Source: Macrostomum lignano (taxonomy: Eukaryota). Taken from it: DNA of 64,000 nucleotides. The translations under genes were made by a program, and so were the position numbers. Shown in pieces: positions 29,501-61,948 of the stretch. Position 1 is the stretch's first letter; each line of letters begins with the position of its first letter. The stretch covers positions 124,001 to 188,000 of the forward strand of contig NIVC01000843.1 of NCBI GenBank assembly GCA_002269645.1, written 5' to 3'. The notes under the pieces are model-generated. The model had not been told where the DNA came from and ran no database searches. It saw nothing but the letters and a program-made list of their open reading frames with translations.

Positions 29501-32203
29501 GCTACCTGTACCTGAGTGAGTTTCTTCAACACCCATCTCATAGCTACCTGTACCTGAGTGAGTTTCTTCAACACCCATCTCATAGCTACCTGTACCCGAG
29601 TGAGTTTCTTCAACACCCAATCTCAAAGCTACCTGTACCCGAGTGAGTTTCTTCAACATCCAAAGCAAAGCAACATCTCACAGAACCCTAACTCCCGAAA
29701 CACCCTCTCACAGATGTAATTTCTTCTAATACAGTTCCATACTTTCAACATAATGAGCAGGTGATTTTATAAGCCCGAATCATTGCTCAATCACTCCCTA
29801 TATAAGGTGGCGAGCGTCAGGAGGCCGGGAAAGAAGGCTTTTGAGCAACGCGACACCCCCCCCCCACCTAGGATTCGGCAAGCGGCCCCTCTAGCGAGGC
29901 TCAGCTGAGATTAGCGGACCTCAGGGTTCAGGCATTTCCTGTTTTCCTTTACATAAGAAAATAAAGCATTTTCGCACCTGCAGATGTGGCCAATGATCAG
30001 CACCTCTTCTTTGGCAAAAATTTGCTTCCAAATGAAAAAATATAAAACCGAAAATTGCTCGCAGTAAAAAGCCGAAAAAGCAACGTAAATCGGCGCAATT
30101 TTCTCCACCCTCGATCAGACGGCAGGTGTCGCTCTGCGGACCCCATTTTGTTTGGGAAAGCGTGTGCCAAGGGTAGGCTATTTGATCCTAGGTGCGCCAA
30201 GGGTAGTCTATCTGATCCTGTTACTCGCCCCTGCCAGCAAAATAACTAGCATAATTCCTACCGGCTTGACTGTGCTCTCTGCCGGAAGTCCGCCGTGTTT
30301 CCTGCCGTTTCGTCGGCACGCTTTTAAGTAGGTGCGAACCCGTTTCCTGGCCCGATCGAACAGCTCGGGGAATTGTCTCTCACACGCGTCCAGTATGCCG
30401 TTGAGCTTGTCCTTGGGCTGCTTGGAAATTGGGACCATTCGGTCCATGTTCTCGTCGACGAAAAATCTGACGAATAGCTGCAGTGTGAGAGTAAAAATAG
30501 GAACACTTAGATGGTGCTCGGTGACTTGGATGGTGTTCTGCGACTTGGATGGTGTTCTGTGACTTGGATGGTGTTCTGTGACTTGGATGGTGTTCCGTGA
30601 ACTGGATGGTGTTCTGTGACTTGGATGGCGTTCTGTGACTTGGATGGCGTTTTATGACTTGGATGGTGTTCTGTGACTTGGATGGTGTTCTGTGACTTGG
30701 ATGATGTTCTGTGACTTGGATGGTGTTCTGTGAATTGGATGTTGTTCCGTGAACTGGATGGTGTTCTGTGACTTGGATGTCGTTCTGTGACTTGGATGGC
30801 GTTCTGTGACTTGGATGGCGTTTTATGACTTGGATGGTGTTCTGTGACTTGGATGGTGTTCTGTGACTTGGATGATGTTCTGTGACTTGGATGGTGTTCT
30901 GTGAATTGGATGTTGTTCCGTGAACTGGATGGTGTTCTGTGACTTGGATGTCGTTCTGTGACTTGGATGGCGTTTTATGACTTGGATGGTGTTCTGTGAC
31001 TTGGATGGTGTTCTGTGACTTGGATGGTGTTCTGCGACTTGGATGGTGCTCGGTGACTTGGATGGTGTTCTGCGACTTGGATGGTGTTCTGTGACTTGGA
31101 TGGTGTTCTGTGACTTGGATGGTGTTCCGTGAACTGGATGGTGTTCTGTGACTTGGATGGCGTTCTGTAACTTGGATGGCGTTCTATGACTTGGATGGTG
31201 TTCTGTGACTTGGATGGTGTTCTGTGACTTGGATGGTGCCCTGTGACTTGGATGGTGTTCTGTGACTTGGGATGGTGGTGTTTTGTGACTTGAAAAGTGT
31301 TCTGTGAACTTAGTCAAGTCAAAGGTGTCTGTAATCGCAAGCATCTGTTGGACTCACATTGAACGCTTTCACTCGCTCGTCGTCCAAGACCGAAGCGCTT
31401 TCAACGCTACCGCGCGGCTCCTCCTCGACATCGTCCTCCTCTTCTTCTTCCTCCTCTTCTTCTTCTCCCTCTTCGGGATCTTCTTCCTTAACTGCTGGCT
31501 GGGCGTTCTTGCTCTCGGCTGCGCCGTTTGACGACTGGAAATTGAGACGAAAATTGCGTTGGGAAGATTACGAAGAGCCACGAAGAAATTACCCACTGTA
31601 CGTAAAATTCAAAAGGCATTAAAACGCTCCTAATTGTGCCAAATCGGGTCCGGATGTCACGGGGTGCTCAAATCGGGTCAGGGTGTCTCGGAGTGGTCAA
31701 ATCGGGTCAGGGTGTCACGGAGTGGTAAAACCGGGTCAGGGTGTCACGGGATGCTCAAATCGGGTCAGGGTGTCACTGGTGCTCAAATCGGGTCAGACGA
31801 AACTCACCGTAACATTCGCACCTTCGGCCTCCTCAGCCTCATTTTTTTCGTCGTCTCGATCTGAGCAGCGTCGTTTTCTCTGACGCGTTGCTTCGTCGAC
31901 GTCAGCGCCGGAGCGGCTGAGATCCAGCACCGAAGACGCAGCCACCTGACTCGACTGCTCTTCCTCTCTGTTGTCGGCATTCTGCTCGGCTTTCTCCTCT
32001 TCAATTGCAGCTTCAGCAGATTCTTTAGCCGTCTCGAAGAGAATTTTGTCCAGCGAACTCTCTTTAGTTGGGGCTGCCGAGTCGGCTGTTGAAGTGGCGG
32101 CTGCGGCAGCGGCAGCGGCGGCGGCGGCAGCAGCGGCTGCGTTTCTAGTCCGACAGCGGGCCTGCGTCCGAGTTGCGGCGGCCAGCGAGGAGACGCTTCG
32201 CAT
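26584..32203 (-). CDS. nol4: Nucleolar protein 4 / NOL4L-like protein: join(31808..32203,31358..31534,30262..30477,28038..28850,26584..26718); the first exon may extend to an acceptor at 32223
   Basis: DERVKAFN|[56 protein letters not shown] matches the conserved NOL4 core. [13 protein letters not shown] and the C-terminal [16 protein letters not shown] match NOL4 motifs. All junctions are phase 0 GT..AG. The start codon is uncertain. Confidence 0.85.
26815..27980. repeat. Two GTTAGA-core minisatellites (22 bp CTACCTGTTAGATAAGATATC at 26815-27100; 20 bp GTTAGACACGCCAGTGACAT at 27215-27980)
   Basis: Visible tandem copies in the last NOL4 intron. Confidence 0.93.
28912..29660. repeat. 42-bp near-perfect minisatellite AGCTACCTGTACCTGAGTGAGTTTCTTCAACACCCATCTCAT
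   Basis: ~17 copies; 14-aa ORF periodicity; intronic. Confidence 0.97.
30507..31305. repeat. 19-bp minisatellite GACTTGGATGGTGTTCTGT
   Basis: Visible; fills the NOL4 intron. Confidence 0.95.
31640..31797. repeat. ~29-bp tandem repeat AAATCGGGTCAGGGTGTCACGG
   Basis: ~5 copies abutting the donor at 31807. Confidence 0.8.
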
Positions 32204-32470: not shown

Positions 32471-33640
32471 GCGGTCCTAGGGCTGGTGGGCCGATGCGCT
32501 CTGGCGTTTGCCTGGAAAAATGAGGAGCAGCAGCTACAGTAAAGGGGAGGGGCAGAAGGGATTTGGAGCCAGTTGGAGGGGGGGGGTGCAGAGAGTGGGA
32601 GAGGGAGGCCCAGCCGGTTAGGGTGGCGCCCCTCCTTTCTCCCAGCCCCGCGCGTCCCGCCTCTGTCGGTCGCTTTTTCTTGCGTCTCTCCCCAGCCCCT
32701 CCCGCAGACCCTCCTGCCTCTGGCGGGGGGCACCCCGGATTCGCTCTCGAGTGTGTCGCTCCCTCTCCCCTAACTACCCCCTGCCTCTCCCGCCTTGCTA
32801 CCTCGCTGGCAGGGCTACGCACCCCCTCATTCTATCCGCAAGCCTGCCCGACACTCCAGAGGGGAGGGGGGGTAAGAGAGGAAGAGACGCTCAGGGGGGC
32901 CAGTTGGTCCCACCCACAATACTATTGCTGAAGGCAGGCCGCGGCTGGGGGCGCCTTGGGCTGCCCTTACTTCCTCTTTCTCTCTCTTTCTCTGGCTGCC
33001 GACTCCCAATGTCGCCTAAATCCTCATCGACACACACACACGATCCCCCCTACTCATGCCTCCTCTCCCACGGCACGGCTAAAGAGAGAGAGAATGAAGG
33101 GTTTGAAGGGGAAGTAGAGGCATAGGAACCATCGGAGGGACACACGGGCAACTCCGAACCCCCCCCCCCCCCCCCTAGCTACTAGCTAGGCGGCCGCCGC
33201 GTCCCTATCGCCGAGGCACCCGGGGCCTGCAGCTCCACCCACCTCTCTTCTTGGCTGTCCCCATCTCCCTGAAATCTCGGCTGGCTCTGTGGCTGACTCC
33301 CACTTTTTTGTATCCCCGGTCTACGCTACGGTTGCCTGATGGAGAGGCTGAATTACCAGCGGGGAGGCGCACCCTCTTCTCTGGCCTCTCAATCTTCCAA
33401 ACCTAGTAAACTAACGAAACTGCCCCCACCCCCATATTCCTCTTGACATCGCCTCTCCCATACTCGATTTTCGCATACAAACTCCTACATGAGCTACTAT
33501 ACGACATCCTCTAGTCTGTATTGGGAGTTGAAAAGTGCCAGGTGTGTAGTGAGTTGTGTTAAAGCTGGCAAAACGTGTCAGGCTCTTATACAAGAGAATA
33601 TACTATTAACGCCAGATTTAAAATTGTGTGTGACAGGTGT

Positions 33641-34535
<895 letters not shown>

Positions 34536-35090
34536 AACGGCAAGAAAGCCAAACAAAGGCAGGAAGGGATCGCGGCCGCCTCTGACCCCACACGGATTAC
34601 CCAAGGCTCCTCACACTCGTTTTCCTCTCTCTGTTGGTTAGGGGGTGGCAGAGTCGTCCTCGCCCTACCTCCATTATTTCTCAGCGCGAACCCCCTCTCG
34701 CCGGTTAGAAGGCGGGGAAAGGGGAACAGGGGCTGAGAGAAAAAGAGGAAGGGACCAAAAAAGGGGAGGAAAGAGGAGAAAACGGCGCGCTGCCTTTGAG
34801 GCCGGATGAGGCAGGCTAGAGGGGGATGGGTCGCAAGAGTCAGTCGCACGCGGGCAGGGGGTAGGAGGAGAAAGGCTTGAGCATTTCGCTTTCCCACCAG
34901 CAGCGGGGGCCGGCAGGGTAAGGCAGGGGTGCCGGACTAGGGAAAAGGCTGCATGGATCCTGGCGGCTGGGTTTAAGTAAGTCGAGTCGACTCGATATTG
35001 GAAGAAAAGTTGTGGAGGCTGAGCCAACTGCATCGATGTTGTCCCAAAGTTGGGTTCTTGTTGCTCTTCTGAGTGCTGTGGGAAGTTTGC

Positions 35091-36662: not shown

Positions 36663-39520
36663 CTATTTGGCATCATTCGGATTGAGTGACACTCGTTTAG
36701 TAAGTCTTCCTTGCTTGTCAACCACCGAATGATAGAACACGTTCCTTCTCTGTCCGGGAATTTTCTTCCCGCAAATAATGCGATTTACGTCCAGCACCAT
36801 GCCCTCCAGATCCTCGGTTTCGTACTGATCGCCAATGACGTCGCACAGAGTCTGAATGAACACCGAGCCTTCGTCTGGGTGCCTGTAAGCCGGCGAATCT
36901 TCCGTGTTGGCAAAGCAGATCAGAAAGTCGCTTTCGTTGGGCACAAAGTTTGCGTTCTTGACCGGCACCTCGCCGTCCGTCTCAAACTCGGTCGCCTTTT
37001 TGGCAGGTTGCAGTCGTCGCGACTCCATCGTTGGCTGAGCAACCTGCTCGACGTTACCGCGACAGGCTTGTATGAAGAACAACTTCGGCTTGCCGTCCAA
37101 GCCTTTGCAGATGTTTGGCTTGAACAGTGAGATCAGATCCTTGATCTGATGGAACTGACCATCTCGACCGTAGATGGCGCCCTTCGTGCCGTGAGCCATC
37201 AGGAAGCAGATAAAGGTCCCGTAGTCCGAATGATCAAACTTGGCGATGCGCGACATCTCATGGAAAATTTGCGGAGCAGTCAAGTCGCGTTTCACCGTCA
37301 CTTTGAAGTGCAACGAAGTGAAGAGCGATTCGACTCGCTCCACATCGAGTTCCGAACCGGTGCGGTTGGTGAAATGCGATCCCGGATCGTAGTGCTCGAT
37401 GCTGATTATCAGGCAGTGACCTTGCGGATCTTTGACCGGGTAGTGGCGGAAAGATCTGCCACTGAAAGTTCAGGTGAGTCAGTCTAGGTTCAGGTGGGTC
37501 AAACTGGCTTCAGGTGAGTCAAACTGGGTTCAGGTGAGTCAAACTGGCTTCAGGTGAGTCAGACTGGGTTCAGGTGAGTCAAACTGGGTTCAGGTGAGTC
37601 AAACTGGGTTCAGGTGAGTCAAACTGGGTCCAGGTGAGTCAAACTAGGTTCAGGTGAGTCAAACTGGCTTCAGGTGAGTCAATAATAAAAACCAGAATCA
37701 CTCTACAAGCAAACTGTTGCACTTACACTGGAAGTGACCGATTCATAAAACTGGTTGACGACCGGTACATTTCGGGTCGCTTCAAAGTTCTATAGATTTA
37801 AAAAATGGACAAATGATAGCTGAGAAATAAACAATAGAACGTTTTTATACATTAAAAATTATTGAGGTCAACTGCTCACCCCACAGGTGCCGCTGATTTT
37901 TGTCTCACGAAGTTTCTTTTGGCACTGCTGGCTCTGGATCGATTGCTCTCACTGTGGTCTTCTTCTTCTACTAGGTCATCGTCAGTATCGACGCTATTGT
38001 TATACGAGGGCAAAAAGTTGCGCAAACAGGTAAAACCTTTTGATCGTTTAGTAGCATTAAAGTAGCATTTTGATTTAAATTTTAAAAGTTACTGGTCCTC
38101 ACTGTACCAGTCTCTTCCTGTCTGTTGAGAATTCCTGCGTTTCAATGGAGATTAAAGTTGAAGTTTCTTGTCTCCGCTCTCCTGTCTCCCTCTCTTATCT
38201 CCCCTCTCTTGTCTCCCTCTCTTATCTCCCTCTCTTATCTCCCATCTCATGTCTCCCTCTCTTATCTCCCCTCTCTTGTCTCCCTCTCTTGTCTCCCTCT
38301 CTTATCTCCCATCTCATGTCTCCCCCTCTTATCTCCCCTCTCTTATCTCCCTCTCTTATCTCCTATCTCATGTCTCCCTCTCTTATCTCCCCTCTCTTAT
38401 CTCCCTCTCTTATCTCCCATCTCATGTCTCCCTCTCTTATCTCCCATCTCATGTCTCCCTCTCTTATCTCCCTCTCTTATCTCCCCTCTCTTGTCTCCCT
38501 CTCTTATCTCCCTCTCTTATCTCCCATCTCATGTCTCCCTCTCTTATCTCCCATCTCTTATCTCCCTCTCTTATCTCCCATCTCATGTCTCCCTCTCTTA
38601 TCTCCCTCTCTTATCTCCCCTCTCTTGTCTCCCTCTCTTATCTCCCTCTCTTATCTCCCATCTCATGTCTCCCTCTCATATCTCCCCTCTCTTGCCCCCC
38701 ATCTCATGTCTCCCTCTCTTGTCTCCCCTCTCTTGTCTCCCTATTTACCATACATGTATCTCCCTCACCTCTCCCCTATGTCTGTTAGCCCTCTCTGAAC
38801 TCCCTCTCGAGCTCACCAGTCAGCCAGCAGTCGCACAACATCGCCGTGCTCGTACATCTCAGCCAGCGACGCCGCCGTATCGCCGTCCTTATCCTCGACG
38901 CCGGGATCGCAGCCGAGCCGCAGCAGCTCCCTGGCCGACCGCAGGTGTCCCCGCCAGCTCGCCAACATCAGCGGCGTCAGTCCGCGCTTGTCAGTGGCGT
39001 CCAGCCGGGCCCCGGCGTCAGCCAGCAGCTTCAGCACCGGCAGGTTGTCGGACTCGGCCGACCAGTGCAACGCCGACACTCCGTCGGGGTCTTTGACGTT
39101 GGCGTCAGCGCCGAGCTGGAGCAGCAGGCTGGCGCAGTCCTTGTGACCGGGGTTCGGTCCGGATTCGCCGCCCCAGGCAGCCCGCAGCAGCGGGGTCTGG
39201 CCCCACCGATCGCGCCTGTTCACATTGCCTCTGTTGGCCAGCAGTTGTAGTCGACGAATGTCGCCCATGAGAGCCAAGTTGCTGAGCTTGTCAGCGGGCT
39301 GTTTAGATTTTTAACAATAATATAGTTTGTGTGTAATTAGCTTTGCTAAATGTTTGCTGGTCTGGAGTCTGGGTAAGATCGTAAATTAATAGTGAGGTAG
39401 ATGGTTTATTGTTTATGAGATCATCGCACAACCAGAGCTGACGGCAATTCAATCGATGCCTTAATTAGGACTAAATACGATTGATTTGCACAGTCTGAAA
39501 CTCACCGTCATTGAGTCCAT
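36663..39520 (-). CDS. Ankyrin-repeat/caspase fusion protein, copy 1 (490 aa): join(39506..39520,38817..39298,37880..37993,37727..37789,36663..37461)
   Basis: MDSMT|ANK exon (4 full + 1 partial repeat; GQTPLLRAA, GVSALHWSA, GLTPLMLAS)|acidic linker exons|caspase p20/p10 with NRTGS, LMAHG, QACRG, AYR..GSVFIQ. All four junctions are GT..AG and phase-compatible (0,2,2,2). Confidence 0.85.
37469..37681. repeat. 20-bp minisatellite CAGGTGAGTCAAACTGGGTT
   Basis: Fills the intron immediately upstream of the caspase exon of copy 1. Confidence 0.92.
38165..38770. repeat. CT-rich degenerate minisatellite in the post-ANK intron of copy 1
   Basis: TCTCCCTCTCTTATCTCCC-type units; homologous array at 46320-46860. 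Confidence 0.9.
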
Positions 39521-40059
39521 GGCATGACCAGATAAGTAGAACTGAGCTATTTTTACGCTGTACTCAAAAAATACTTCACTCTGTCTTTTATCATTTATCT
39601 TTTTTAAAATATTATTTGAACTACCTAGTATAACAAAGCAACAATAGTGCAGTTTGTGCTCAAACCAACTCAAAAATTTAGCCTGCTATTCAAAGCTCTC
39701 AGACGCCTTTTAAAAACTCTTAATAGATAAAACCACTAACCCACAAGTACAATGGCGGCTTAAAATAATGCCATTAAAATGCTTCAAGCTGTAGATAGAG
39801 ATAGAAAGTGTGTCTCTTGGCTGCGCCATTGTGCATTGCAGCTCTGATCGGTGTAGACTGTAGTGAGAGCCCCGTGCGTAAAACAGCTCAAGTCCGTGAG
39901 TTTTGTCATAATTGTGTCCGGATCCGCCATTCAATTTCTATAGTTTTACTTAAATGAAATAAATTTACTTAGAAAGACAAAATTTGACCACCTAACAGCG
40001 AAGCGGATATCCAGTACATTCAAGGACATTTTAGGAGGCGCTATTTCATCTAGAGAGGC

Positions 40060-40802
40060 GCCATTTTGCTTGAAGAGGCGCCATATCATTTTAATGTGTG
40101 CGGCTTTATTTAGAGAGGCGCCATTTCATTGGATGAGGCGCCATTTCATTGGATGAGGCGCCATTTCATTGGATGAGGCGCCATTTCATTGGATGAGGCG
40201 CTATTTCATTGGATGAGGCGCCATTTCATTGGATAAGGCGCCATTTCATTGGATGAGGCGCCATTTCATTGGATGAGGCGCCATTTCATTGGATGAGGCT
40301 CCATTTCATTGGATGAGGCGCCATTTCATTGGATGAGGCGCCATTTCATTGGATGAGGCGCCATTTTTTAGATAGGCGCCATTTTTTTAGATGAGGCGCC
40401 ATTTCATTAGATGAGGCGCCATTTCATTGGATGAGGCGTTATTTCATTGGATGAGGCGCCATTTCATTGGATGAGGCGCCAATTCATTGGATGAGGCGCC
40501 ATTTCATTGGATGAGGCGCCATTTTTTTAGATGAGGCGCCATTTTTTTAGATGAGGCGCCATTTCATTAGATGAGGCGCCATTTCATTGGATGAGGCGTT
40601 ATTTGATTGGATGAGGCGCCATTTCATTGGATGAGGCGCCATTTCATTGGATGAGACGCCATTTCATTGGATGAGGCGCCATTTCATTGGATGAGGCGCC
40701 ATTTCATTGGATGAGGCGCCATTTCATTGGATGAGGCGCCATTTCATTGGATGAGGCGTTATTTCATTGGATGAGGCGCCATTTCATTGGATGAGGCGCC
40801 AG
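40060..40802. repeat. 20-bp minisatellite GAGGCGCCATTTCATTGGAT
   Basis: Visible; paralogous array at 42430-42862. Confidence 0.95.
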
Positions 40803-41274
40803 TTTCAGCTTAAGAGTTGCCAGTAGCGATTAGCTGGATAAAAAAAGAAAATTTGATAAAAGCTAAGTAACCAAGCTTTTATTGTCCGAGTATGAGGGCT
40901 GAATGAAATGAAACTTTGCAAAATGAGAAAAGCTGGACGAGACAAAAAAAACTGTTTGATTGCTACAGAGATAGATGTACAGAAAGACAGATGGGCCATT
41001 ACCTTTGAAAGTTCGCAAATAACAAAAGACAAAGTTATTACGTCGTAAGTGCTTGGCATGACAGCAACTAGGGAGGCTGATTCTGCATTCTTATTGATTT
41101 ATGTTGCAGACATGTGCAAATAATATAACGGAGAAGGGCGAAGGAGAAGGATGTCATTGGGTAGTTCCCTATTAGTCATAATCAGTTCAGCTGGGCTAGT
41201 GAGATAGAAAAATGGATGGATGGGTATTTCAGAAAAATCTATAATTCTTTCTGCATATTGGTGCACTCGTACGC

Positions 41275-41800
41275 GACAGTTAGTAAAGTAGGGTTAGAAA
41301 GGGTAGCAGAAAAAATCGATAATTCTTCCCGCACATTGGTGTACGTAACAGTTAGTAAAATAGGGTTAGAAAGGGTAGCTTAAAAATCGATAATTCTTCC
41401 CGCACATTGGTGTACGCAACAGTTAATAAAATAGGGTTAGAAAAGGGCTAGCAGAAAAATCGATAATTCTTCCCGCACATTGGTGTACGCAACAGTTAAT
41501 AAAATAGGGTTAGAAAAGGGCTAGCAGAAAAATCGATAATTCTTCCCGCACATTGGTGTACGCAACAGTTAATAAAATAGGGTTAGAAAAGGGCTAGCAG
41601 AAAAATCGATAATTCTTCCCGCACATTGGTGTACGCAACAGTTAGTAAAATAGGGTTAGAAAAGGGCTAGCTGAAAAATCGATAATTCTTCCCGCACATT
41701 GGTGTACGCAACAGTTAGTAAAATAGGGTTAGAAAAGGGCTAGCAGAAAAATCGATAATTCTTCCCGCACATTGGTGTACGCAACAGTTAATAAAATAAC
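41275..41800. repeat. 73-bp tandem repeat (~7 copies)
   Basis: CGCACATTGG recurs at 41401, 41474, 41547... Confidence 0.92.
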
Positions 41801-42429
41801 CGAAATTCTGTCCATTCCGCTGACTCCTGACCACATACAAGCGCGTAAATACTGTACGCAGTCACGCACTCATGCACACGCTCACCACGGGGTGTACAGC
41901 GGCTCACAGACAGTCTGTTAGTATAGTGCCTTCAAGCTTCAGTCGATATTTAGTTCAACTCAAATACAACTGATTTATAATCTGAAACTCACCGTCATTG
42001 AGTCCATGTCTTGACCAGATAAAACTGAGCTATTTTTGGGAGTTAGTCAGATAAAAAACTTTTCTGAGTCTTTCATAATTCATCTATTTAAATAATTTTT
42101 GTATTCAAGCAGGGAGTGTAACAGGAGAAGGCATGGCTATTTAAAACTCTCTCATGCTGAAACCACTAGCCCACACGTACAATGGTCAGCTTACAATTAT
42201 GCCTTTAAAATGCTCCAATGTGTAAATTAGAGATAGAAAGTGTATTTCTTGGCTGGGCCATTGTGCATTGCAGAGCTCTGATAAAAGGGCCCCGTAAAGC
42301 AGCTCAAGGAATTCATGAATTTTGTTATTATGTCGCGCTATCGACCGCCATTTAGTTTCTACAAGCTACCGTGAGATAGAAAAAAATCTGACCACCCGGC
42401 AGACAGAAAAGCGGATACAGAATTTCGTT

Positions 42430-42862
42430 TAGAGAGGCGCCATTTTATTTAGAGAGGCGCAATTTCATTTAGAGAGGCGCCATTTCATTTGAAGAAGAGC
42501 CATTTCATTTGGAGAGGCGCCATTTCATTTGAAGAAGAGCCATTTCATTTGAAGAGGCGCCATTTCATTTGAAGAGGCGCCACTTCATTTAGAGAGGCGC
42601 CCGTTCATATGAAGAGGTGCCATTTTATTTGAAGAAGAGCCACTTCATTTGAAGAGGCGCCATTTCATTTGAAGAGGCACCATTTCATTTGAAGAGGCGC
42701 CACTTCATATAGAGAGGCGCCATTTCATTTAGGAAGGCGCCAGTTTCTTCAAAAGGCACCATTTCATTTGAAGAGGTGCCATTTCACTTGGGAAGGCGTA
42801 ATTTCCCTTGGGAAGGCGCCATTTCCCTTGGGAAGGCGCCATTTCACTTGAAGAGCGCCAGT
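42430..42862. repeat. 20-bp minisatellite GAGGCGCCATTTCATTTGAA
   Basis: Visible; paralog of 40060-40802. Confidence 0.9.
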
Positions 42863-43856
42863 TCGTCTCAAAAGCGGTCAGCTAGAAAAGAATAATGATT
42901 TAATAAAAATTGAGTAATCAAGCTTTTATTGTCCGATTCTGAGGACCAAATCTGAAATGAAGCAGAGTCTTAACATAACAAAATGAAAATCAAAAGCAGC
43001 TTAACAGGGCGAGACAAAAAACTGTTCAATTGCTACAGAGAAAGAAGTACAGAAAGACGGTAAAAAGGCTTAATTCTAGTGAGGACAAAAAACTTCAAAA
43101 GTTTCGCAAATGACAACAGTTTTTAAGTGCTTGGCAAGACAGCAACTAAAAGGGCTGATTTTGCATTCAAATTATGTTGATGACTTTGGTGCAAATAATA
43201 CAAGCTATAACAGAGAAGGGCGAAGGAGAAGGATGTTTCGTTAGGATGTCCCTGTAGTCAAAATCAGTTACACTGGGCTAGTAGTTAGGGAAATGGAGGG
43301 GTGGGTGTTTGGGAGGGGCGGTATAGAGTCGATAAACCCATAATTCCTCGCGTACAATAATGAAAAACACAACAGTCAATCAAATAGGGTTAGAAAGGGT
43401 AGACAGGAAAATCAATAATTGCTCTCGCACATTAGTGTGCGCAACAGTCAGTAAAATTGGGTTAGAAAGGGTAGACTGGAAAATCGATCATTTCTCTCGC
43501 ACATTGGTGTACAAGACAAAATAGTTAATTAAGCTTTTTAACACCGCTGAATCGATTGAGCTATCAAACCACCGTCGACAGAAAATCATATAGGTGTTGA
43601 AGCCGATGGACAAAAATGTAAAAATACAATCTAAACCGTGCAAATAATTGTCATAAAGCTTAGTTAAAGACCGGAAAAAACCCAAATGTCTAAAGGGATT
43701 TAGCAAAGTTTAGCTTGTTACGCTCTATCAAGTAAGGTTTTACCATCAGACAAAAACAGATCGCGATTTTTTAAAGTAAAACGGGTCTCATTTTACGGGT
43801 CCAATTTTCTAAAATGGGCTGTTTGGTCCCTTGATAGAGAGGCTATCAAAATTGTT

Positions 43857-46800
43857 TCACGAAGCCATATGCGGATTGAACGACACCTTCTTTGATAGAC
43901 GACCGGTTTTCTCCACCACCGCCTGATAGAAGCTGCCGTCTCCGCCTTGAATTGGTCGATTAGTGACCCGATTGTTCACTTCCAGTATCATGTCCTCGAG
44001 GAATTCAGTTTCGTATTGCTCTTCGATAACGTCGCATAGAGTCTGAATAAATATTGACCCGTTGTTGGGATCCCGGTAAGCTGGCGAGTCTTCCGTGTTG
44101 GCGTAGCAAATGAGGAAGTCGCTCTCGTTCGGGCTGTAGAGAGGATTCCTCACCGGTACGTTGCCATCGTGCTGAACCTCCGGTGCGGGCTCGGCGAGGT
44201 GCTCGCCACCGGCTCCGCGACAGGCCTGCGTGAAGAAGATCTTCGGCTTGCGCTCCAGACCGCGACACTTGCTCGGCTGGAACAGCGACACCAGCTCCTT
44301 GAGCGACTGGTACTGCCCGTCGCTTCCGTAGATCGCGCCCTTGGTGCCGTGGGCCATCAGGAAGCAGACGAATGTGCCAAATTGGCTGTGGTCGCCTCGA
44401 GCATAGTTGCTCAACTCCCAGAAGATCTCCTGACCTGCGAATGGTTTCAACGCATTCTAAGAAACCGGAATTTTGACCAAGCGGAAGCATTGTCAATTAG
44501 ATTTGATATCGTTTCACGTGTCACAGCTAACGAAGACAAGGGGTCATGCCCATTCCGTTGATGCCTGAAAATGCACAAGCACGCGGATAAGTACTAGGCA
44601 AGCAAGCACAGGCTCACGCAAGGTGCACAAGCGGCCCCTGGCTTTCAAATGTCTTTTCTCTTCATCAGGCAAACGAACGAACAAACTGGACGAACAGTCT
44701 TAAGGACGTTACTACCGAGCCAATTTGTCCCCTCGATACGAGCGTATGTTTTACTTAATTGAATCAATAAAGGATGCCAAAAGTAAAAATTTGTACCTGT
44801 CACATCCTTTATTATCCACACCTTGAAGCCGAGCGATTTAAACAACATTTTAACTCGACGCAAGTCCAGGTTTGAGCCTTCGCGACGACTGAAGTTGGAC
44901 TCCGGATCGTAGTTCTCGATATTGACAACAACGCAGTGGCCTTGTGAGGCTCTGTTACTGGGTACACGTTGCCTGAGTGACCTCTGTCGGTGGAGGGCAG
45001 TGTCTTAGTGTTGAGAGCAGTGTCTTAGTGTTAAGAGCAGTGTCTTAGTGTTAAGAGCAGTGTCTTAGTGTTAAGAGCAGTGTCTTAGTATTAAGAGCAG
45101 TGTCTTAGTATTAAGAGCAGTGTCTTAGTGTTAAGAGCAGTGTCTTAGTGTTGAGAGCAGTGTCTTAGTGTTAAGAGCAGTGTCTTAGTGTTAAGAGCAG
45201 TGTCTTAGTGTTAAGAGCAGTGTCTTAGTATTAAGAGCAGTGTCTTAGTATTAAGAGCAGTGTCTTAGTGTTAAGAGCAGTGTCTTAGTGTTGAGAGCAG
45301 TGTCTTAGTATTAAGAGTAGTGTCTTGTAATAAGGGCAGTGTCTTAGTGTTAAGAGCAGTGCCTTAGTATTAAGAGCAGTGTCTTAGTATTAAGAGTAGT
45401 GTCTTGTGTTGAGAGCAGTGTCTTAGTGTTAAGAGCAGTCTCTTAATGTTAGGAGCAGTATCTCAGTTTTTAGAGTGTATCAGGGTTGAGAGCAGTATCT
45501 CAGGGTTGAGAGCAGTATCTCAGGGTTGAGTGGGCACCTAGATATGTGGGTTGGCTGTTGAAATCTTAAAGAGATAAATACTATCTCAGGAAAACTTACC
45601 CAAAATCTGAGTGACTGTGCACTGGCGATGGAGAAAGACGCCCAAATCTGCAAAGGACAAAAATACACAAGAATGATTAAATTGAAATGCTAATGAAATA
45701 AATATTTTACCTTCACAAACAGAACCATCATTTATAACCATACCCAATAGGATTCAGCGATCTTGCTTGATCAGTCTGCTGCGGCAGGAACATGTCCATC
45801 TTCATCTGCTCCAGAAAGTGAACGCTGTAAAAGTACATTTAAATCAATTTTTTCGAACACTGAGTAAGTGTCGAGCGATCTAAGTCAGTTTCAAAACAGT
45901 TAGATTTGCATCTCTAGAAGCGGACTCACTCGTCATCGCCATCCATCTGTACTGGCGCTTTGAATTTTGCGGAGGCTCCGTGGGAGTTCTTTGACCTGAA
46001 GATTTTCGAGTTCAGAGACTATTGTCTGAAAGATTATTGTTCTTGAGTTAAAGCCTTTTGTCTATAAAACATCCCTAAGTTTTGGGGATCGTTTCGCCAT
46101 GCGACCCCTGGTTCGATTCCGTGCGCGGTCAAATTCATTGGGGGCTTGTGTGCATGAAAATTGGTCAGGGGGTTGTCGTGCGATTCAGAACGCATGAGGG
46201 CCAGTGCCCAAAGCACAGAGTGTACCGGTACATGCCTGATGATTCGAAAATTAGACGACTACAATTGATTCGCAGACCCATGCCTGCAGATCAGGGCCAC
46301 TGCACTGTACACCCTGTGCTCTCTTGTCTCCCTCTCTTGTCTCCAATCTCTTGTCTCCCCTCTCTTGTCTCTCCTCTCTTGTCTCCCCTCTCTTATCTCT
46401 CCTCTCTTGTCTCCCTTCTCTTATCTCCCCTCTCTTGTCTCCCCTCTCTTGTCTCCCCTCTCTTATCTCTCCTCTCTTGTCTCCCTTCTCTTATCTCCCC
46501 TCTCTTGTCTCCCCTCTCTTATCTCTCCTCTCTTGTCTCCCTTCTCTTATCTCCCCTCTCTTGTCTCCCCTCTCTTGTCTCCCCTCTCTTATCTCTCCTC
46601 TCTTATCTCCCCTCTCTTGTCTCCCCTCTCTTGTCTCCCCTCTCTTATCTCTCCTCTCTTGTCTCCCTTCTCTTATCTCCCCTCTCTTGTCTCCAATCTC
46701 TTATCTCTCCTCTCTTGTCTCCCTTCTCTTATCTCCCCTCTCTTGTCTCCCCTCTCTTGTCTCCCCTCTCTTGTCTCTCCTCTCTTGTCTCCCTATCTAC

Positions 46801-47353
46801 CATATATCCCTCTCCTCTCCCACATGTCACCTCCGCTCTCCCTCCCTTATCTCCAGATGCAGCGAGCTCACCAGTCAGCCAGCAGTCGCACAACATCGCC
46901 GTGCTCGTACATCTCAGCCAGCGACGCCGCCGTGTCGCCGTCCTTATCCTCGACGCCGGGATCGCAGCCGAGCCGCAGCAGCTCCCTGGCCGACCGCAGG
47001 TGTCCCCGCCAGCTCGCCAACATCAGCGGTGTCAGTCCGCGCTTGTCGGTGGCGTCCAGCCGGGCCCCGGCGTCAGCCAACAGCTTTAGCACCGGCAGGT
47101 TGTCGGACTCGGCCGACCAGTGCAACGCCGACACTCCGTCGGGGTCTTTGACGCTGGCGTCGGCGCCGAGCTGAAGCAGCAGGCTGGCGCAGTCGGCGTG
47201 GCCCTGGTTGGGCACGAACTCGCCAGCCCAAGCAGCCCGCAGCAGCGGGGTCTGGCCCCACCGATCGCGCCAGTTAGCGTTCTGCCTGTTGGCCAGCTGT
47301 CTGAGCCTTTGGACGTCGCCCATCAGAGCCAGGTTGCTCATGGATGTGGCTGT
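43857..47353 (-). CDS. Ankyrin-repeat/caspase fusion protein, copy 2: join(?,46872..47353,45930..45995,45744..45824,44797..44981,43857..44434); first exon unresolved
   Basis: 482-nt ANK exon (same length as copy 1), two phase-2 linker exons, and a caspase split by a 362-nt phase-1 intron (IKDVT-G|QEIFW). RREGS, LMAHG, QACRG, AYR..GSIFIQ present. The acceptor at 44982 is a weaker GAG. Confidence 0.8.
44995..45530. repeat. 20-bp minisatellite GTGTCTTAGTGTTAAGAGCA
   Basis: Visible; abuts the caspase exon acceptor of copy 2. Confidence 0.93.
46085..46320 (+). mobile_element. Possible tRNA-derived SINE fragment
   Basis: B-box-like GGTTCGATTCC at ~46109; body motif AGAGTGTAC..ATGCCTG..TGTACAC also near 12457, 15190 and (reverse) 41885. 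Confidence 0.35.
46320..46860. repeat. CT-rich minisatellite in the post-ANK intron of copy 2
   Basis: TCTCCCCTCTCTTGTC-type units. Confidence 0.9.
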
Positions 47354-47484
47354 CTGAATAAAAAGTACATGTGCAAGCATTCACATAGTAGTTTTATAAG
47401 CGTTCGTCTTCTGAAGAGTAGCACACGTGTTCTTTAGAGGCGAGGCTTCAGCTTTGCGGGTGTGACTAAGACGCTAAAGAACGC

Positions 47485-49628: not shown

Positions 49629-51499
49629 ATCGGATATGCTGTCGAGCGATTGGGTAGTCAAGTCAAAAGGAACCTACACGTAGTTAATCCCCAAATCTCG
49701 CAGATTGCTGTCCTATTTATACACGCCATTATGTATAGAGACTGCGTAAAAACTGTGATAATATTTTCATAAAAAATTGACAGCTGCATTTAAGTTAACC
49801 ATTTTCATGACTAATCGTTGATAAAATTACTCCGAGTTAGTTGACAGAAATCGTTGCAAGTCAATCTATGATTGATATTTGCGCAGAGATATATCTTTTT
49901 GTTTATTAAATTTCATTTTTTAATTGCACGATTTCCTTAACCGATTGTAGTATATGGAATCGCGTGTCCTCGTGGTTAAGCTACTGGTTTTACTGATTTC
50001 TCTTCAGTTGGTTAGTCCGAGCTCGGGAGACTCCGGGCTTGGCCTAAGTTGGAAGATTTTTCTATTTACTTTTAAGTTGGCTAAGTAGTTCCTATGGTCT
50101 AGGATACTTCGCTCTATTAATCTGTTATTACGTACTCTTAATTGGTAGGTTGCTGCCACCAGACTAATGTCCCTTTATAGTTAATATTTTAATTAAAATA
50201 AGTGAGACAAGAGTCAATTTCATGTAAGGTTATTGGAATAAACAAACTGAAAAATGATATTATTGAACCAAAATATGCAAAAGATTAAGCACTACTATTT
50301 CCTATTTTAATAGAACCGGTAGACTCCTGGTTCCTTTAGTTAGACCAAATGGTAGACTCCTTTTAGTCTTTCCCTTAATTTTACTTAATTTATTCCTATT
50401 TTCGGTAGACTCCGTTTAGCTAAGTGGTAGACTCCTCTTAGCTTCCCTATTTCACCCCGAACTTACCTGTATACTTTTTATAATTCTTCTTTTAAAAAAG
50501 GGGAGACTCCCTTGTCTTTACAAATGTTGTCCAACGGACGGTCCTGAACAGGATGCTAGACTGATTGTCCCGAACGGATGCTTTTCCCGAGGCTAAACAG
50601 CCTTTTACTAATGGAGAAACCCACTAAGACTCGAATTCCCATAACTTCAGATATTTCCCCGAGGGTGAACTACTATCAGTAGCGTAAAAGCAAAACTGCT
50701 TATTCTAGACTTTAAGCTACTAAAATAATTCATCTCGACGAATGGCAAACGCCTTAGCAAAACTGCTTGAAATAAACCCCCTACTACATATAGAAATATT
50801 TGTAGAGATCTCCAAATACAGTGCAAGTAAACTACTATAAGTAGTAACGTAAAAATGCGAAAACTTAGAATCTAAAAACACCAAGTGGTCACACTCTATT
50901 TTTAGAAGACCACGAAAACAACGAGTGATCATCTTATGTAACATCTAAAAATAGAACTCCAAATATGGTAGTGATACTACACAAAACATATTGTATTCTA
51001 TTCAGTTTTCGAGAGGTCAAAATTCCAAAAAGCAAATGAATCGCCTTCCCAAAATAACCTGTTTACCCCAAAAATTTACTACATATGCAAGCCAAAATCC
51101 GAGCTAAAAATCTCAGACTCGGAGCAGCCTCCAAAGATCTTAAAGCTTGCTGGAGCAGCTAAGCGAGGCTACATCTCTGAGGGAGAAGTAAACCAATTGG
51201 TGAGCCTCGAGCCTTTGTTATTTGGATTTAGTGAGAGCGATTTATTGCCCGCCGTTACTGATCAGTTGATTTAATTGAGTTAATTGAATTTGAGGTCTCC
51301 CATTTTCCTAAGGGATTGGAAAGGATTTGCGGATCGATTCCGATACCCTTAGAGGATTATGGAGTGATTGATTTTGGATTATCCTAGATTAACCGATAGG
51401 AGCACACGACTCCGATTCCGTTAGTTCTAGAAGACGCCCTTTTTGGAGGACCTCGTGTTGTTATAGAAGTTGATATTGTTATTGGGGCGCATCGTTGAT

Positions 51500-52696
51500 A
51501 TTGATTTCGGCACTCGAGGAATACATTGAATTCTGCACTCGAGGAATACATTGATTCCTGCACTCGAGGAATACATTGATTCCGGAACTCGAGGAATACA
51601 TTGATTCCGGAACTCGAGGAATCCATTGATTTCTGCACTCGAGGAATACATTGATTCCTGCACTCGAGGAATACATTGATTTCTGCACTCGAGGAATACA
51701 TTGATTCCTGCACTCGAGGAATACATTGATTTCTGCACTCGAGGAATACATTGATTCCGGAACTCGAGGAATACATTGATTCCTGCACTCGAGGAATGCA
51801 TTGATTCCTGCACTCGAGGAATACATTGATTTCGACACTCGAGGAATACATTGATTCCGGAACTCGAGGAATACATTTATTTCGGCACTCGAGGAATACA
51901 TTGATTCCTGCACTCGAGGAATACATTGATTTCGGCACTCGAGGAATACATTGATTCCTGCACTCGAGGAATACATTGATTCCGGAACTCGAGGAATACA
52001 TTGATTTCGGCACTCGAGGAATACATTGATTTCGGAACTCGAGGAATACATTGATTCCTGCACTCGAGGAATACATTGATTTCTGCACTCGAGGAATACA
52101 TTGATTCCTGCACTCGAGGAATACATTGATTTCTGCACTCGAGGAATACATTGATTTCGGCACTCGAGGAATACATTGATTTCGGAACTCGAGGAATACA
52201 TTGATTTCGGCACTCGAGGAATACATTGATTTCTGCACTCGAGGAATACATTGATTTCGGCACTCGAGGAATACATTGATTTCGGAACTCGAGGAATAAA
52301 TTGATTTCGGCACTCGAGGAATACATTGATTTCTGCACTCGAGGAATACATTGATTTCGGAACTCGAGGAATACATTTATTTCGGAACTCGAGGAATACA
52401 TTGATTTCGGAACTCGAGGAATACATTTATTTCGGAACTCGAGGAATAAATTGATTTCTGCACTCGAGGAATACATTGATTTCTGCACTCGAGGAATACA
52501 TTGATTCCTGCACTCGAGGAATACATTGATTTCTGCACTCGAGGAATACATTGATTCCGGAACTCGAGGAATACATTGATTCCGGAACTCGAGGAATACA
52601 TTGATTCCTGCACTCGAGGAATACATTGATTTCTGCACTCGAGGAATACATTGATTCCGGAACTCGAGGAATACATTGATTTCGGCACTCGAGGAA
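51500..52696. repeat. 25-bp minisatellite with internal palindrome, ATTCCT-GCACTCG-AGGAAT-ACATTG (~47 copies)
   Basis: Visible; constant CTCGAGGAATACATTGATT with a 5-nt variable patch; no unique spacers. Confidence 0.96.
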
Positions 52697-60943: not shown

Positions 60944-61948
60944 TTATCTAGTAGAACTGCCACCAGCACCGCCACACTTATTACGCAGGTTTACCAGGTA
61001 GAGTAGATCGCTTAAACTCTCTTCAGTCTCGTCGTCACAAATATCATCAAGTCTGGCTTCTGCAGCGGCTGCCTCCGGGGATGCATGTCGTCTTCCTCGT
61101 CTGCCACGCTGTCGACTTGTCGTCGTTCCACCGGCAGCCGCGTCCGAACGCAGCTTGGCCTCGGCTTCGGCTTTGTAAACGGGGCGCCAATAGTATGGCG
61201 ACTTATTCTGATCGAGTCGCTGATTAACTAACAATCTGCAGCCGTCCGCCGCTAACTGCAAAGCTATTTTAGCCACATTAACTGCATCGTCCAGACCGCA
61301 GTGCGGCCTGCCCTCGAATTCCAGGCCAAGAGCGGCCAGCATGCCAGACAAATTGAGCTTCCTTTCTAGTGCATAGTGACGCTGGAATGTGATCCTCAGA
61401 TTCACCCAATAGTGCGCCCAAGCTGGCACTGGAATGCCGTCGAGAGAGCACTGAAGGCGCAGAAATGTTGCCACATCTGCTTGACAGTCGGCAGCCAGAG
61501 CCAGCGGCTCAGTCAATGCGTCAGAATGCTGCAGCCAAGCTTGAACGGCGGCCAGTGCGGCTGGGAAACTCGGCGCCGAGTCCACAACATCCTGCTCAAT
61601 GCCAGTAAACTGACGACAGAACTCAGACAGTTTAGGATGCAGTTTAGGCCGACAATAGGTGTGAAATTTATCTACAACTTTGCCCTCGTGTAGATCTAGT
61701 AATACTAATGGAAATTCGATGATTTCGTGCTGATAATTATCGGGATTTTGACTCTCGCAGGTGGCTTCAAAGTCTACAACTAGCAGGTAGCGATAGGCCT
61801 GTTCAACTCGAGCCTGCTTGTAGCTGCGAATTCTACGACTCAGGATTTCAGCATTGCCTCGACAGTCCAGGCCAGCGTCTGATGCTGCTACGCGGAGTTG
61901 ACGTAACTCGCGCTCCTCAGCTGAGTCATTGTCAGCTGATGAGCTCAT
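60944..61948 (-). CDS. eri1: 3'-5' exoribonuclease ERI1 (SAP-like + DEDDh domain), uninterrupted CDS, 334 aa
   Basis: YLLVVDFEATC, EIIEFP, F..YCRP..HP.LSEFC..FTGI.Q..VD.A, GLEFEGRPHCGLDDA.N; N-terminal SAP-like segment GLDCRGNAEILSRRI. Confidence 0.93.
   Translation of the reverse strand: MSSSADNDSAEERELRQLRVAASDAGLDCRGNAEILSRRIRSYKQARVEQAYRYLLVVDFEATCESQNPDNYQHEIIEFPLVLLDLHEGKVVDKFHTYCRPKLHPKLSEFCRQFTGIEQDVVDSAPSFPAALAAVQAWLQHSDALTEPLALAADCQADVATFLRLQCSLDGIPVPAWAHYWVNLRITFQRHYALERKLNLSGMLAALGLEFEGRPHCGLDDAVNVAKIALQLAADGCRLLVNQRLDQNKSPYYWRPVYKAEAEAKLRSDAAAGGTTTSRQRGRRGRRHASPEAAAAEARLDDICDDETEESLSDLLYLVNLRNKCGGAGGSSTR

What the first reader, a model, noticed from the sequence alone, without database searches (positions are those of the whole stretch)
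36663..47353. Tandem pair of ankyrin-repeat-caspase fusion genes
Seen: in both copies an ANK exon joins through phase-compatible linker exons to a caspase domain. It retains catalytic His (AHG) and Cys (QACRG), both Asp-pocket arginines (R-x-G-S; AYR..GS.F) and a candidate inter-subunit cleavage site (FETD|G; VQHD|G). Known: initiator caspases normally carry CARD or DED prodomains and effectors short ones, so an ankyrin array is not a classical caspase prodomain. Inference: a lineage-specific sensor-protease in which ANK repeats bind a ligand or partner and dimerise the protease, in immunity or cell death. Whether such fusions are already described in some invertebrates could not be checked.
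Basis: partly seen in the sequence, partly recalled or inferred. Interest (0 to 1): 0.88.

Follow-up and report, generated by a model that had tools for sequence, protein, structure and literature searches.

The report
Tandem ankyrin-prodomain caspase genes, flatworm
Two neighbouring genes of the free-living flatworm Macrostomum lignano each encode a cell-death protease (caspase) with an ankyrin-repeat front end; this type was published in 2014 and 2024 but was reported as confined to parasitic flatworms, so these genes extend the known range and are not a new kind.

Summary
On the minus strand lie two same-orientation genes. Copy A spans 39268-36663 and copy B spans 47323-43857. In each, one exon encodes a 4-repeat ankyrin (ANK) array. 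Short linker exons with GT-AG introns and compatible phases join it to a complete caspase domain. That domain keeps the His/Cys dyad, both S1 arginines and an Asp site in the inter-subunit linker.

The window is Macrostomum lignano: a UniProt gene model is 99% identical and uses the same junctions. The architecture is not new. "ANK caspases" were noted in Schistosoma (Lee 2014) and defined by Horkan et al. 2024, who called them restricted to parasitic flatworms.

M. lignano in fact holds a large ANK-caspase family, including ANK+kinase+caspase and Ras/Roc+caspase forms. One member (Mlig019067) groups with the parasite ANK caspases. The window pair sits in a Macrostomum-specific expansion.

Two further details:
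- The 3' two-thirds of the ANK exon is nearly identical between the copies (dS 0.07), while the caspase domains are old (dS about 2.2). This points to gene conversion.
- Copy B carries a 2-nt insertion that only a downstream acceptor can bypass.

The function, a recruited initiator-like protease, is inferred and not shown.

The parts
38817..39268 (-). Copy A exon 1: start codon at 39268 and a 4-repeat ankyrin array (150 aa). The donor is GT at 38816-38815. An acceptor-like AG lies at 39300-39299, and the P0001 model begins at 39298, which may be a trans-splice or 5'UTR acceptor.
   Evidence: Pfam Ank_2 1.2e-28. Gene model. The N-terminus of P0001, 'PADKLSNLALMGD', equals the translation from 39298.
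38093..38134 (-). Copy A optional 42-nt cassette exon (NSQQTGRDWYSEDH), in frame. Including it gives a 489-aa isoform.
   Evidence: Used in gene model P0388 ('LLADWNSQQTGRDRYSEDHVDTDDD'). AG/GT flanks and frame checked.
37880..37993 (-). Copy A linker exon 2. It is acidic and Asp-rich (VDTDDDLVEEED...) and is a candidate prodomain-removal site.
   Evidence: The junctions are identical in P0001 and P0002.
37727..37789 (-). Copy A linker exon 3 (TLKRPEMYRSSTSFMNRSLPV).
36663..37461 (-). Copy A exon 4: the complete caspase domain (p20, inter-subunit linker, p10) and the stop TAG at 36665-36663. Motifs: His MAHG 37199-37188, Cys QACRG 37070-37056, FETD|G 36986-36972. An alternative tandem acceptor lies at 37455.
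   Evidence: Pfam Peptidase_C14 2.5e-39. PDB caspase-8 4e-35. The AF2 model matches caspase folds at TM 0.72-0.87. Coordinates.
46872..47323 (-). Copy B exon 1: the ankyrin array. ATG at 47323, with alternative in-frame ATGs at 47341 and 47380. Codons 58-150 are nearly identical to copy A.
   Evidence: Pfam Ank_2 2.4e-34. 91% nt identity to copy A; codons 58-150 have dN 0 and dS 0.07.
45930..45995 (-). Copy B linker exon 2 (SKNSHGASAKFKAPVQMDGDD), Asp-rich at its end.
   Evidence: Present in P0388.
45744..45824 (-). Copy B linker exon 3 (VHFLEQMKMDMFLPQQTDQARSLNPIG).
   Evidence: Present in P0388.
45600..45647 (-). Copy B putative 48-nt linker exon 4. It is uncertain: it is phase-neutral and is not used in the P0388 model.
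44797..44983 (-). Copy B exon 5: the start of p20. The canonical acceptor at 44983 (used in P0388) is out of frame in this window because of a 2-nt CA insertion at about 44946-44943. The acceptor at 44951 restores the frame.
43857..44434 (-). Copy B exon 6: the rest of p20, the linker and p10, with stop TGA at 43859-43857. Motifs: MAHG 44357-44346, QACRG 44228-44214, VQHD|G 44177-44163.
   Evidence: Pfam Peptidase_C14 2.4e-31. Coordinates.
38166..38742 (.). Minisatellite filling intron 1 of copy A. A related array (46319-46793) fills intron 1 of copy B. Both lie within the 87%-identical block 38284-39283 / 46319-47338.

Best explanation
What it is: a tandem pair of paralogous Macrostomum lignano genes on the same strand, B upstream of A. 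Each encodes an 'ANK caspase': a 4-repeat ankyrin prodomain, an acidic and probably disordered linker, and a catalytically intact caspase domain. They belong to a Macrostomum-expanded family of caspases with modular prodomains.

How it most likely works (inferred, not shown):
1. The protein behaves as an initiator-type zymogen.
2. The ANK array binds an unknown partner or platform.
3. The resulting local crowding dimerises the protease domains.
4. The enzyme cuts itself after Asp in the inter-subunit linker (FETD|G in A, VQHD|G in B). It possibly also cuts in the Asp-rich stretch just after the ANK array (VDTDDD in A, MDGDDD in B).
5. The released p20/p10 enzyme cleaves substrates after Asp.

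ANK repeats 2-4 have been kept almost identical between the two genes by gene conversion, while the protease domains are only 56% identical. The two proteases therefore probably answer to the same upstream partner but differ in output.

Copy B in this haplotype may be impaired by a 2-nt insertion unless a downstream acceptor is used.
For: Shown:
- Domain content.
- Full in-frame GT-AG gene models.
- Independent UniProt models with the same junctions.
- The species.
- Conserved Arg/His/Cys/Arg residues and linker Asp sites.
- A caspase fold.
- Purifying selection on the protease domains, dN/dS 0.15.
- No in-frame ATG upstream of the first S1 Arg within caspase exon 4 of copy A. The only nearer in-frame ATGs are two in linker exon 3, which lie upstream of the whole protease domain. 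So exon 4 depends on upstream exons.
- Paralogues with Ank+Peptidase_C14 in the GenBank BOX15 annotation (P0004, P0229, P0247, P0382, P0389, P0396). That annotation was built from RNA-seq-guided transcripts with boundaries set by trans-splice and poly(A) signals (PMC5730564).
- The same exon logic in paralogue P0004: each ANK array is one exon, followed by short linker exons, and the caspase exon starts just before 'FYPV'.
- A mosaic of divergence ages: ANK codons 58-150 dS 0.07, codons 1-57 dS 0.59, caspase dS about 2.2.

Initiator-like character:
- A long prodomain.
- Caspase-8 and caspase-9 are the best solved sequence matches.
Against: - No RNA evidence for this exact locus could be examined.
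- The UniProt models are of mixed quality. P0388 merges B and A into one protein, and P0003 is chimeric with a downstream gene.
- No binding partner, activity or phenotype is known for any ANK caspase.
- The fold search does not separate initiator from effector caspases; the top hits are caspase-3 and caspase-7.
- My NJ tree does not place the window clade with DED caspases with any support.
- With the canonical acceptor, copy B is frameshifted.
Confidence: 0.6

Rival explanations
1. The ANK array is not a recruitment module. It is either an intramolecular regulator that docks on the protease and masks the active site or dimer interface, or a substrate-targeting arm of an effector-like caspase that upstream caspases activate by cleavage at FETD/VQHD.
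For: - Ankyrin scaffolds can bind and inhibit caspases. The DARPin work cited in PMC11463336 shows this.
- The ANK domain here resembles consensus and DARPin-type repeats.
- The Foldseek top hits are effector caspases 3 and 7.
- The Asp-rich linker could allow removal by another caspase.
Against: - The best sequence matches among solved structures are caspase-8 and caspase-9.
- The published phylogeny places ANK caspases next to DED initiators.
- No intramolecular contact was modelled, because the spliced full-length protein could not be submitted.
Confidence: 0.2
2. Only copy A is functional. In this haplotype copy B is a decaying pseudogene, frameshifted by the CA insertion at about 44946-44943, or the insertion is an assembly error in an otherwise intact gene.
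For: - With the acceptor used in the near-identical second locus (P0388: 'GHSSNVYPVTEPQGHCVVV'), the window reads 'YPVTEPHKATALL...' and reaches stop codons.
- The M. lignano assemblies are long-read based, and the genome carries about 180 Mb of >=95% identical duplicated blocks (PMC5730564).
Against: - Everything downstream of the insertion is an intact ORF with all catalytic residues.
- The A-versus-B dN/dS of 0.15 is an average over both lineages since the duplication, so it says little about recent decay in copy B.
- An AG acceptor at 44953-44952 restores the frame exactly.
- The second locus shows an intact B copy.
Confidence: 0.3
3. The ANK exon and the caspase exons belong to separate mRNAs: adjacent genes, or cistrons of a polycistronic precursor resolved by spliced-leader trans-splicing. 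On this view the fusion is a gene-prediction artefact.
For: - About 7% of assembled M. lignano transcripts are polycistronic precursors (PMC5730564).
- If intron 1 is retained, the ANK ORF ends immediately in both copies (LADW-stop), giving a possible 151-aa ANK-only product.
- In-frame ATGs in linker exon 3 of copy A could start a caspase-only product.
Against: - The same ANK-to-caspase architecture recurs in at least six independent M. lignano loci whose GenBank models were cut at experimentally mapped trans-splice and poly(A) sites.
- It also occurs in Taenia, Cichlidogyrus, a jellyfish and an intronless metagenomic ORF.
- All junction phases are compatible in both copies.
- Caspase exon 4 has no in-frame ATG of its own upstream of the first S1 Arg.
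Confidence: 0.05

Closest known systems
ANK caspases of parasitic platyhelminths (Horkan et al. 2024, Genome Biol Evol 16:evae204; first noted in Schistosoma by Lee et al. 2014)
   Same: - An N-terminal ankyrin-repeat prodomain on a p20/p10 caspase in a flatworm.
- A QACRG active site.
- Loss of the Trp in the 'GSW[FY]' motif (V or I here; I or V in Taenia, Cichlidogyrus, Sparganum and Schistosoma).
- No DED or CARD domain.
   Different: - The host is free-living, whereas the paper states the class is restricted to parasites.
- The window genes fall in a Macrostomum-specific expansion and not in the neodermatan clade. Monophyly of all flatworm ANK-type caspases was recovered in 0 of 300 NJ bootstraps, although the deep nodes are unresolved.
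- The window genes lack the long insertion in the inter-subunit linker and the 'AQR' motif of the parasite proteins.
- A different M. lignano gene, P0247 (Mlig019067), does group with the parasite proteins (85-87% bootstrap) and shares the 'AQR' motif.
Caspase-8 / DED caspases (initiators of extrinsic apoptosis)
   Same: - The best sequence match among solved structures: human caspase-8, 124.7 bits, E 4e-35.
- A 'xYR' motif before the second S1 Arg.
- A long inter-subunit linker whose Asp sites align with VETD/LEMD.
- A long prodomain, which implies recruitment-driven activation.
   Different: - No DED domains.
- QACRG instead of QACQG.
- The prodomain is an ANK solenoid and not a death-fold, so FADD/DISC-type assembly cannot apply. 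FADD is reported lost in flatworms (PMC11463336).
Other M. lignano caspases with modular prodomains (P0004/Mlig000705, P0229/Mlig009377, P0276/Mlig001045, P0389/Mlig014209, P0396/Mlig000156; P0252/Mlig018903 ANK+kinase+caspase; P0232/Mlig000293 Ras/Roc+caspase)
   Same: - The same caspase subfamily: the 'FLMAHG' motif, 38-45% identity, and clade support of 55-66%.
- The same exon logic, with each ANK array in a single exon followed by linker exons.
   Different: - The window genes have the shortest prodomain, one 4-repeat array, against two or more arrays (600-790 aa) or added kinase or GTPase domains in the others.
- Some paralogues have lost catalytic residues: P0125 has QAGRG, and P0229 and P0276 have QACRT.

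Membership tests
Caspase (peptidase family C14A) | Significant match to the Peptidase_C14 profile covering p20 and p10 | tested here: met
   A 2.5e-39 (profile positions 27-223 of 233 for the ORF part), B 2.4e-31; human caspase-8, -9 and -3 at E 1e-30 to 4e-35.
Caspase (peptidase family C14A) | Catalytic His-Cys dyad (xHG ... QACxG) | tested here: met
   MAHG and QACRG in both copies, aligned to SHG and QACQG of caspase-8.
Caspase (peptidase family C14A) | S1 pocket for Asp: two Arg plus the Gln of QACxG | tested here: met
   The R in NRTGS/RREGS and the R in AYRHP/AYRDP align with the conserved Arg columns in 31 of 32 and 31 of 32 sequences respectively.
Caspase (peptidase family C14A) | Caspase/hemoglobinase fold | tested here: met
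   AF2 model of copy A exon 4: pTM 0.72, core pLDDT 75-95, linker disordered. Foldseek hits in the PDB: caspases 3, 7, 8 and 9, probability 1.00, TM(target) 0.72-0.87.
Caspase (peptidase family C14A) | Cleavage after Asp; autoprocessing | not testable with these tools
   Needs recombinant enzyme and substrates.
ANK caspases (Horkan et al. 2024) | Ankyrin-repeat pro-domain N-terminal to p20/p10 in one polypeptide | tested here: met
   Shown at the level of gene models only: in-frame GT-AG models and independent UniProt models with the same junctions. mRNA of this locus was not examined.
ANK caspases (Horkan et al. 2024) | Membership of the monophyletic ANK-caspase clade (PP 1.00 in the paper) | tested here: inconclusive
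   NJ on 244 columns and 32 sequences. The window pair sits in a Macrostomum clade (55-66%). P0247 plus the neodermatans group at 85-87%. All flatworm ANK-type sequences together: 0 of 300 bootstraps. Deep nodes have support below 30. An ML or Bayesian analysis with wider sampling is needed.
ANK caspases (Horkan et al. 2024) | Reported distribution: parasitic platyhelminths only (plus one annelid) | tested here: not met
   M. lignano is free-living, yet at least seven of its loci encode Ank+Peptidase_C14. This contradicts the stated distribution, not the architecture.
DED caspases (caspase-8/10) | Tandem death effector domains in the prodomain | tested here: not met
   No DED hit in any exon or model. 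The Mytilus control P0128 shows DED at 6e-16.
Effector caspases (3/6/7) | Short prodomain (<30-40 aa) with no interaction module | tested here: not met
   About 210 aa precede the protease domain, including a 150-aa ANK array.

The most novel reading that the evidence does not exclude
ANK caspases did not arise with parasitism. They are an ancestral rhabditophoran, or older, innovation. In the free-living Macrostomum they diversified into a modular family with ANK, ANK+kinase and Ras/Roc prodomains. This family could replace the lost DED/FADD extrinsic pathway as a set of recruitment-activated death or immune proteases. In the window pair, gene conversion keeps one shared ANK binding surface on two divergent protease domains, which would make one input drive two outputs.
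Probability: 0.3. Interest if true: 0.55.

Novelty: new member of a known kind. Interest (0 to 1): 0.35.

Why it matters
The only paper that defines ANK caspases ties their origin to parasitism and states that free-living flatworms lack them. This locus and its paralogues show that a basal, free-living and experimentally tractable flatworm has many. One of them groups with the parasite proteins. Transgenesis is published for M. lignano (PMC5730564), and RNAi is in use there to my knowledge.

This moves the question [quoted passage not shown] into a laboratory model. It also weakens the argument that these proteases are parasite-specific. The gain is incremental: a correction of distribution and an entry point for function, not a new class.

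Tried and rejected
I repeated it with exon-exact sequences.
It is therefore unknown whether GenBank holds a model for this very locus. No BOX15 protein clusters with P0001-P0003.
3. The supplementary tables of Horkan et al. are not held, so their M. lignano sequence list could not be checked.
4. I looked for the parasite ANK caspases among the top hits of the word-indexed searches. Only ANK-less models appeared (Sparganum P0141, Schistosoma P0144). These later proved to belong to the neodermatan ANK-caspase clade, so their N-termini are probably mis-annotated or too divergent.
5. The ANK domain searched against the PDB gives only generic ankyrin and DARPin matches, so it offers no clue to a partner.
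6. Loss of the Trp in 'GSW[FY]' was considered as a synapomorphy of flatworm ANK caspases. I rejected it as decisive because it also occurs in a bird caspase-8, in Mytilus and in Haliotis sequences.
7. Further ANK or caspase exons in the window: none found.
8. A bacterial Ank+caspase-like protein (P0098) has the reverse domain order and is unrelated in detail.
Full report
**What is in the sequence**

The region lies in a repeat-rich eukaryotic window. Four minus-strand ORFs give strong Pfam matches:
- Peptidase_C14 at 36663-37343 (2.5e-39) and at 43857-44450 (2.4e-31).
- Ank_2 and other Ank families at 38813-39277 (1.2e-28) and at 46868-47380 (2.4e-34).

Reading the minus strand and assembling exons gives two gene models.

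Copy A has exons 39268-38817 (ANK), 37993-37880, 37789-37727 and 37461-36663 (caspase). Every intron is GT-AG, the phases are compatible, and the ORF is 475 aa.

Copy B has exons 47323-46872 (ANK), 45995-45930, 45824-45744, a doubtful 45647-45600, 44951-44797 and 44434-43857. The ORF is 459 aa.

No other ANK or caspase exon exists in the window.

**Organism and independent gene models**

A search with the copy A protein found Macrostomum lignano proteins at 99% identity (P0001, UniProt A0A1I8J6A3, annotated with both Ank and Peptidase_C14).

P0001 and P0002 read '...RLLADCVDTDDD...APVGTLKRP...NRSLPVSFRHYPV...'. These are the same three junctions as my model. The last uses a tandem acceptor 6 nt downstream, at 37455.

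P0001 starts with 'PADKLSNLALMGD'. That is the translation from base 39298, immediately after an AG. This pattern is what a trans-splice or 5'UTR acceptor would give.

A third model, P0388 (A0A1I8J1T4, 791 aa), comes from a 95-99% identical second locus and wrongly merges B and A into one protein. It is still informative in three ways:
- The B-then-A tandem order is conserved at that locus.
- A 42-nt in-frame cassette exon exists in copy A (window 38134-38093). Including it gives a 489-aa isoform.
- Copy B there reads 'VYPVTEPQGHCVVV'. In the window a CA insertion (about 44946-44943) shifts the frame if the same acceptor (44983) is used. Only the AG at 44953-44952 rescues it.

Copy B in this haplotype may therefore be impaired, mis-assembled or alternatively spliced. 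I could not decide which.

**Is the fusion real at the RNA level?**

I could not examine reads. The indirect evidence is strong:
- The GenBank annotation of assembly Mlig_3_7 (BOX15 locus tags) derives from RNA-seq-guided transcripts. Their boundaries were cut at mapped trans-splice and poly(A) sites (PMC5730564).
- In that annotation at least six other loci encode Ank+Peptidase_C14 in one gene: P0004 (Mlig000705), P0229 (Mlig009377), P0247 (Mlig019067), P0382 (Mlig001045), P0389 (Mlig014209) and P0396 (Mlig000156).
- The P0004 gene (locus L001) has the same logic: each ANK array is a single exon, short linker exons follow, and a caspase exon begins just before 'FYPV'.
- Caspase exon 4 of copy A has no in-frame ATG upstream of the first S1 arginine. 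Two in-frame ATGs in linker exon 3 lie upstream of the whole protease domain, so a caspase-only isoform starting there cannot be excluded.

A residual alternative remains. If intron 1 is retained, the ANK ORF stops at once (LADW-stop) in both copies, so an ANK-only product is conceivable.

**The protease**

The caspase exon of copy A matches human caspase-8 best among solved structures (124.7 bits, E 4e-35), then caspase-9 and caspase-3. The alignment, and a 32-sequence alignment, show several conserved features:
- The first S1 Arg, the His of MAHG, the Cys of QACRG and the second S1 Arg are all present.
- FETD|G and VQHD|G lie in the inter-subunit linker opposite the caspase-8 cleavage region.
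- The Trp of 'GSW[FY]' is replaced by Val or Ile.

An AlphaFold2 model has a confident core and a disordered linker (pTM 0.72). It matches caspases 3, 7, 8 and 9 at TM 0.72-0.87. The fold does not discriminate effector from initiator. dN/dS between the A and B protease domains is 0.15.

**A mosaic history**

The two ANK exons are 91% identical in DNA, but unevenly so. Codons 1-57 have dS 0.59. Codons 58-150 (repeats 2-4) have 5 synonymous and 0 non-synonymous differences, giving dS 0.07. The caspase domains have dS about 2.2 and 56% amino-acid identity, and the linkers are unrelated.

The similar block runs on into the minisatellite of intron 1 (38284-39283 versus 46319-47338, 87%). The simplest reading is an old tandem duplication followed by recent gene conversion of the 3' part of the ANK exon. 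Both proteases therefore carry the same ANK surface.

**Comparison with what is known**

Horkan et al. 2024 (PMC11463336) define 'ANK caspases':
- They are a platyhelminth clade sister to DED caspases.
- They were first seen in Schistosoma (Lee et al. 2014).
- They are 'restricted to parasitic platyhelminths', with one exception in an annelid.
- For M. lignano the paper reports only a caspase with a kinase-like pro-domain.
- No functional work exists.

A profile of the Macrostomum caspase domains searched against 1.84 billion representatives, followed by ANK detection and Pfam, gave these results:
- There are many M. lignano ANK caspases.
- The 'kinase' caspase is in fact ANK+Pkinase+caspase (P0252).
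- There is a Ras/Roc+caspase (P0232).
- Parasite ANK caspases are present: Taenia solium P0352 and Cichlidogyrus P0304.
- A jellyfish protein (P0238) and an intronless ORF on a groundwater metagenome contig (P0387, L002) also have the architecture.

In an NJ tree of 32 caspase domains:
- A and B are sisters (100%).
- They sit in a Macrostomum-specific clade (55-66%).
- The neodermatan proteins form a clade (100%) whose sister is M. lignano P0247 (85-87%). P0247 also shares their 'AQR' motif.
- Monophyly of all flatworm ANK-type caspases was never recovered, but the deep nodes are unresolved.

**Verdict**

The architecture is already described and already present in public gene models, so this is a new member of a known kind.

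What is worth reporting is that a free-living basal flatworm has a large ANK-caspase family, contrary to the published distribution. One member is apparently orthologous to the parasite proteins. This particular pair also shows concerted evolution of the ANK exon.

The mechanism is inferred from architecture and from the behaviour of other long-prodomain caspases. It consists of ANK-mediated recruitment, proximity-induced dimerisation and autocleavage after Asp. No step of it has been demonstrated.

Noticed in passing
L002:8-1555 (ENA ERZ978523, groundwater metagenome contig, 2526 bp): An intronless 515-aa ORF (P0387) encodes 3-4 ankyrin repeats plus an animal-type caspase (QACRG, GSIF). The organism is unknown. 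This is an ANK-caspase outside flatworms.
   Followed up: partly
P0252 (BOX15_Mlig018903, 1060 aa) and P0232 (BOX15_Mlig000293, 757 aa), not in the window: M. lignano caspases of the same subfamily carry ANK+protein kinase or Ras/Roc GTPase prodomains. The 'kinase pro-domain caspase' of Horkan et al. also has ANK repeats at its N-terminus.
   Followed up: partly
P0247 (BOX15_Mlig019067, 599 aa), not in the window: This M. lignano ANK caspase groups with the Taenia, Cichlidogyrus, Sparganum and Schistosoma proteins (NJ bootstrap 85-87%) and shares their 'AQR' motif. It is a likely orthologue of the 'parasite-specific' ANK caspase.
   Followed up: partly
P0141 (Sparganum proliferum) and P0144 (Schistosoma turkestanicum): These proteins fall inside the neodermatan ANK-caspase clade but show no Pfam Ank hit. 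Their N-termini are low-complexity, so the ANK region is either mis-annotated or highly divergent.
   Followed up: no
P0238 (Sanderia malayensis, EukProt): A jellyfish model has two ANK+caspase units in tandem. The first unit has DACRE instead of QACRG and lacks the first S1 Arg. It could be a fused model or a pseudo-protease.
   Followed up: no
window 37468-37682, 38166-38742, 44997-45520, 46319-46793, 40035-40807, 42422-42864, 41269-41798: Minisatellites with periods of 14-73 nt occupy several introns of both genes and the intergenic spacer. The acceptor of caspase exon 4 of copy A (37461) lies at the edge of a 20-nt repeat array whose units each contain an acceptor-like 'cag'.
   Followed up: partly
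window 3375-10802 and many other stretches (e.g. 18822-19813, 28108-29668, 33578-34897, 51384-52638): Very long tandem-repeat arrays produce spurious ORFs of up to 2475 aa. This is consistent with the repeat-rich M. lignano genome.
   Followed up: no
window 60944-61948 (-): A 334-aa ORF with an RNase_T/DEDDh exonuclease domain (5.6e-25), apparently a single-exon gene.
   Followed up: partly
window 54891-55565 (-): An ORF with LAMP-like luminal and transmembrane segments (Lamp2_2nd 9e-12).
   Followed up: partly
window 16590-16979 (-): The ORF begins with '[13 protein letters not shown]', the end of a homeodomain helix 3. It is probably the last exon of an NK-type homeobox gene. There is no Pfam hit for the fragment.
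   Followed up: no
window 31793-32203 (-): This ORF matches the C-terminal part of the chimeric UniProt model P0003 ('[32 protein letters not shown]'). P0003 fuses a degraded copy-A-like sequence with this downstream gene.
   Followed up: no
P0125, P0229, P0276 (M. lignano paralogues): Some paralogues have lost active-site residues. P0125 has QAGRG, and P0229 and P0276 have QACRT. This suggests pseudo-caspases within the family.
   Followed up: no
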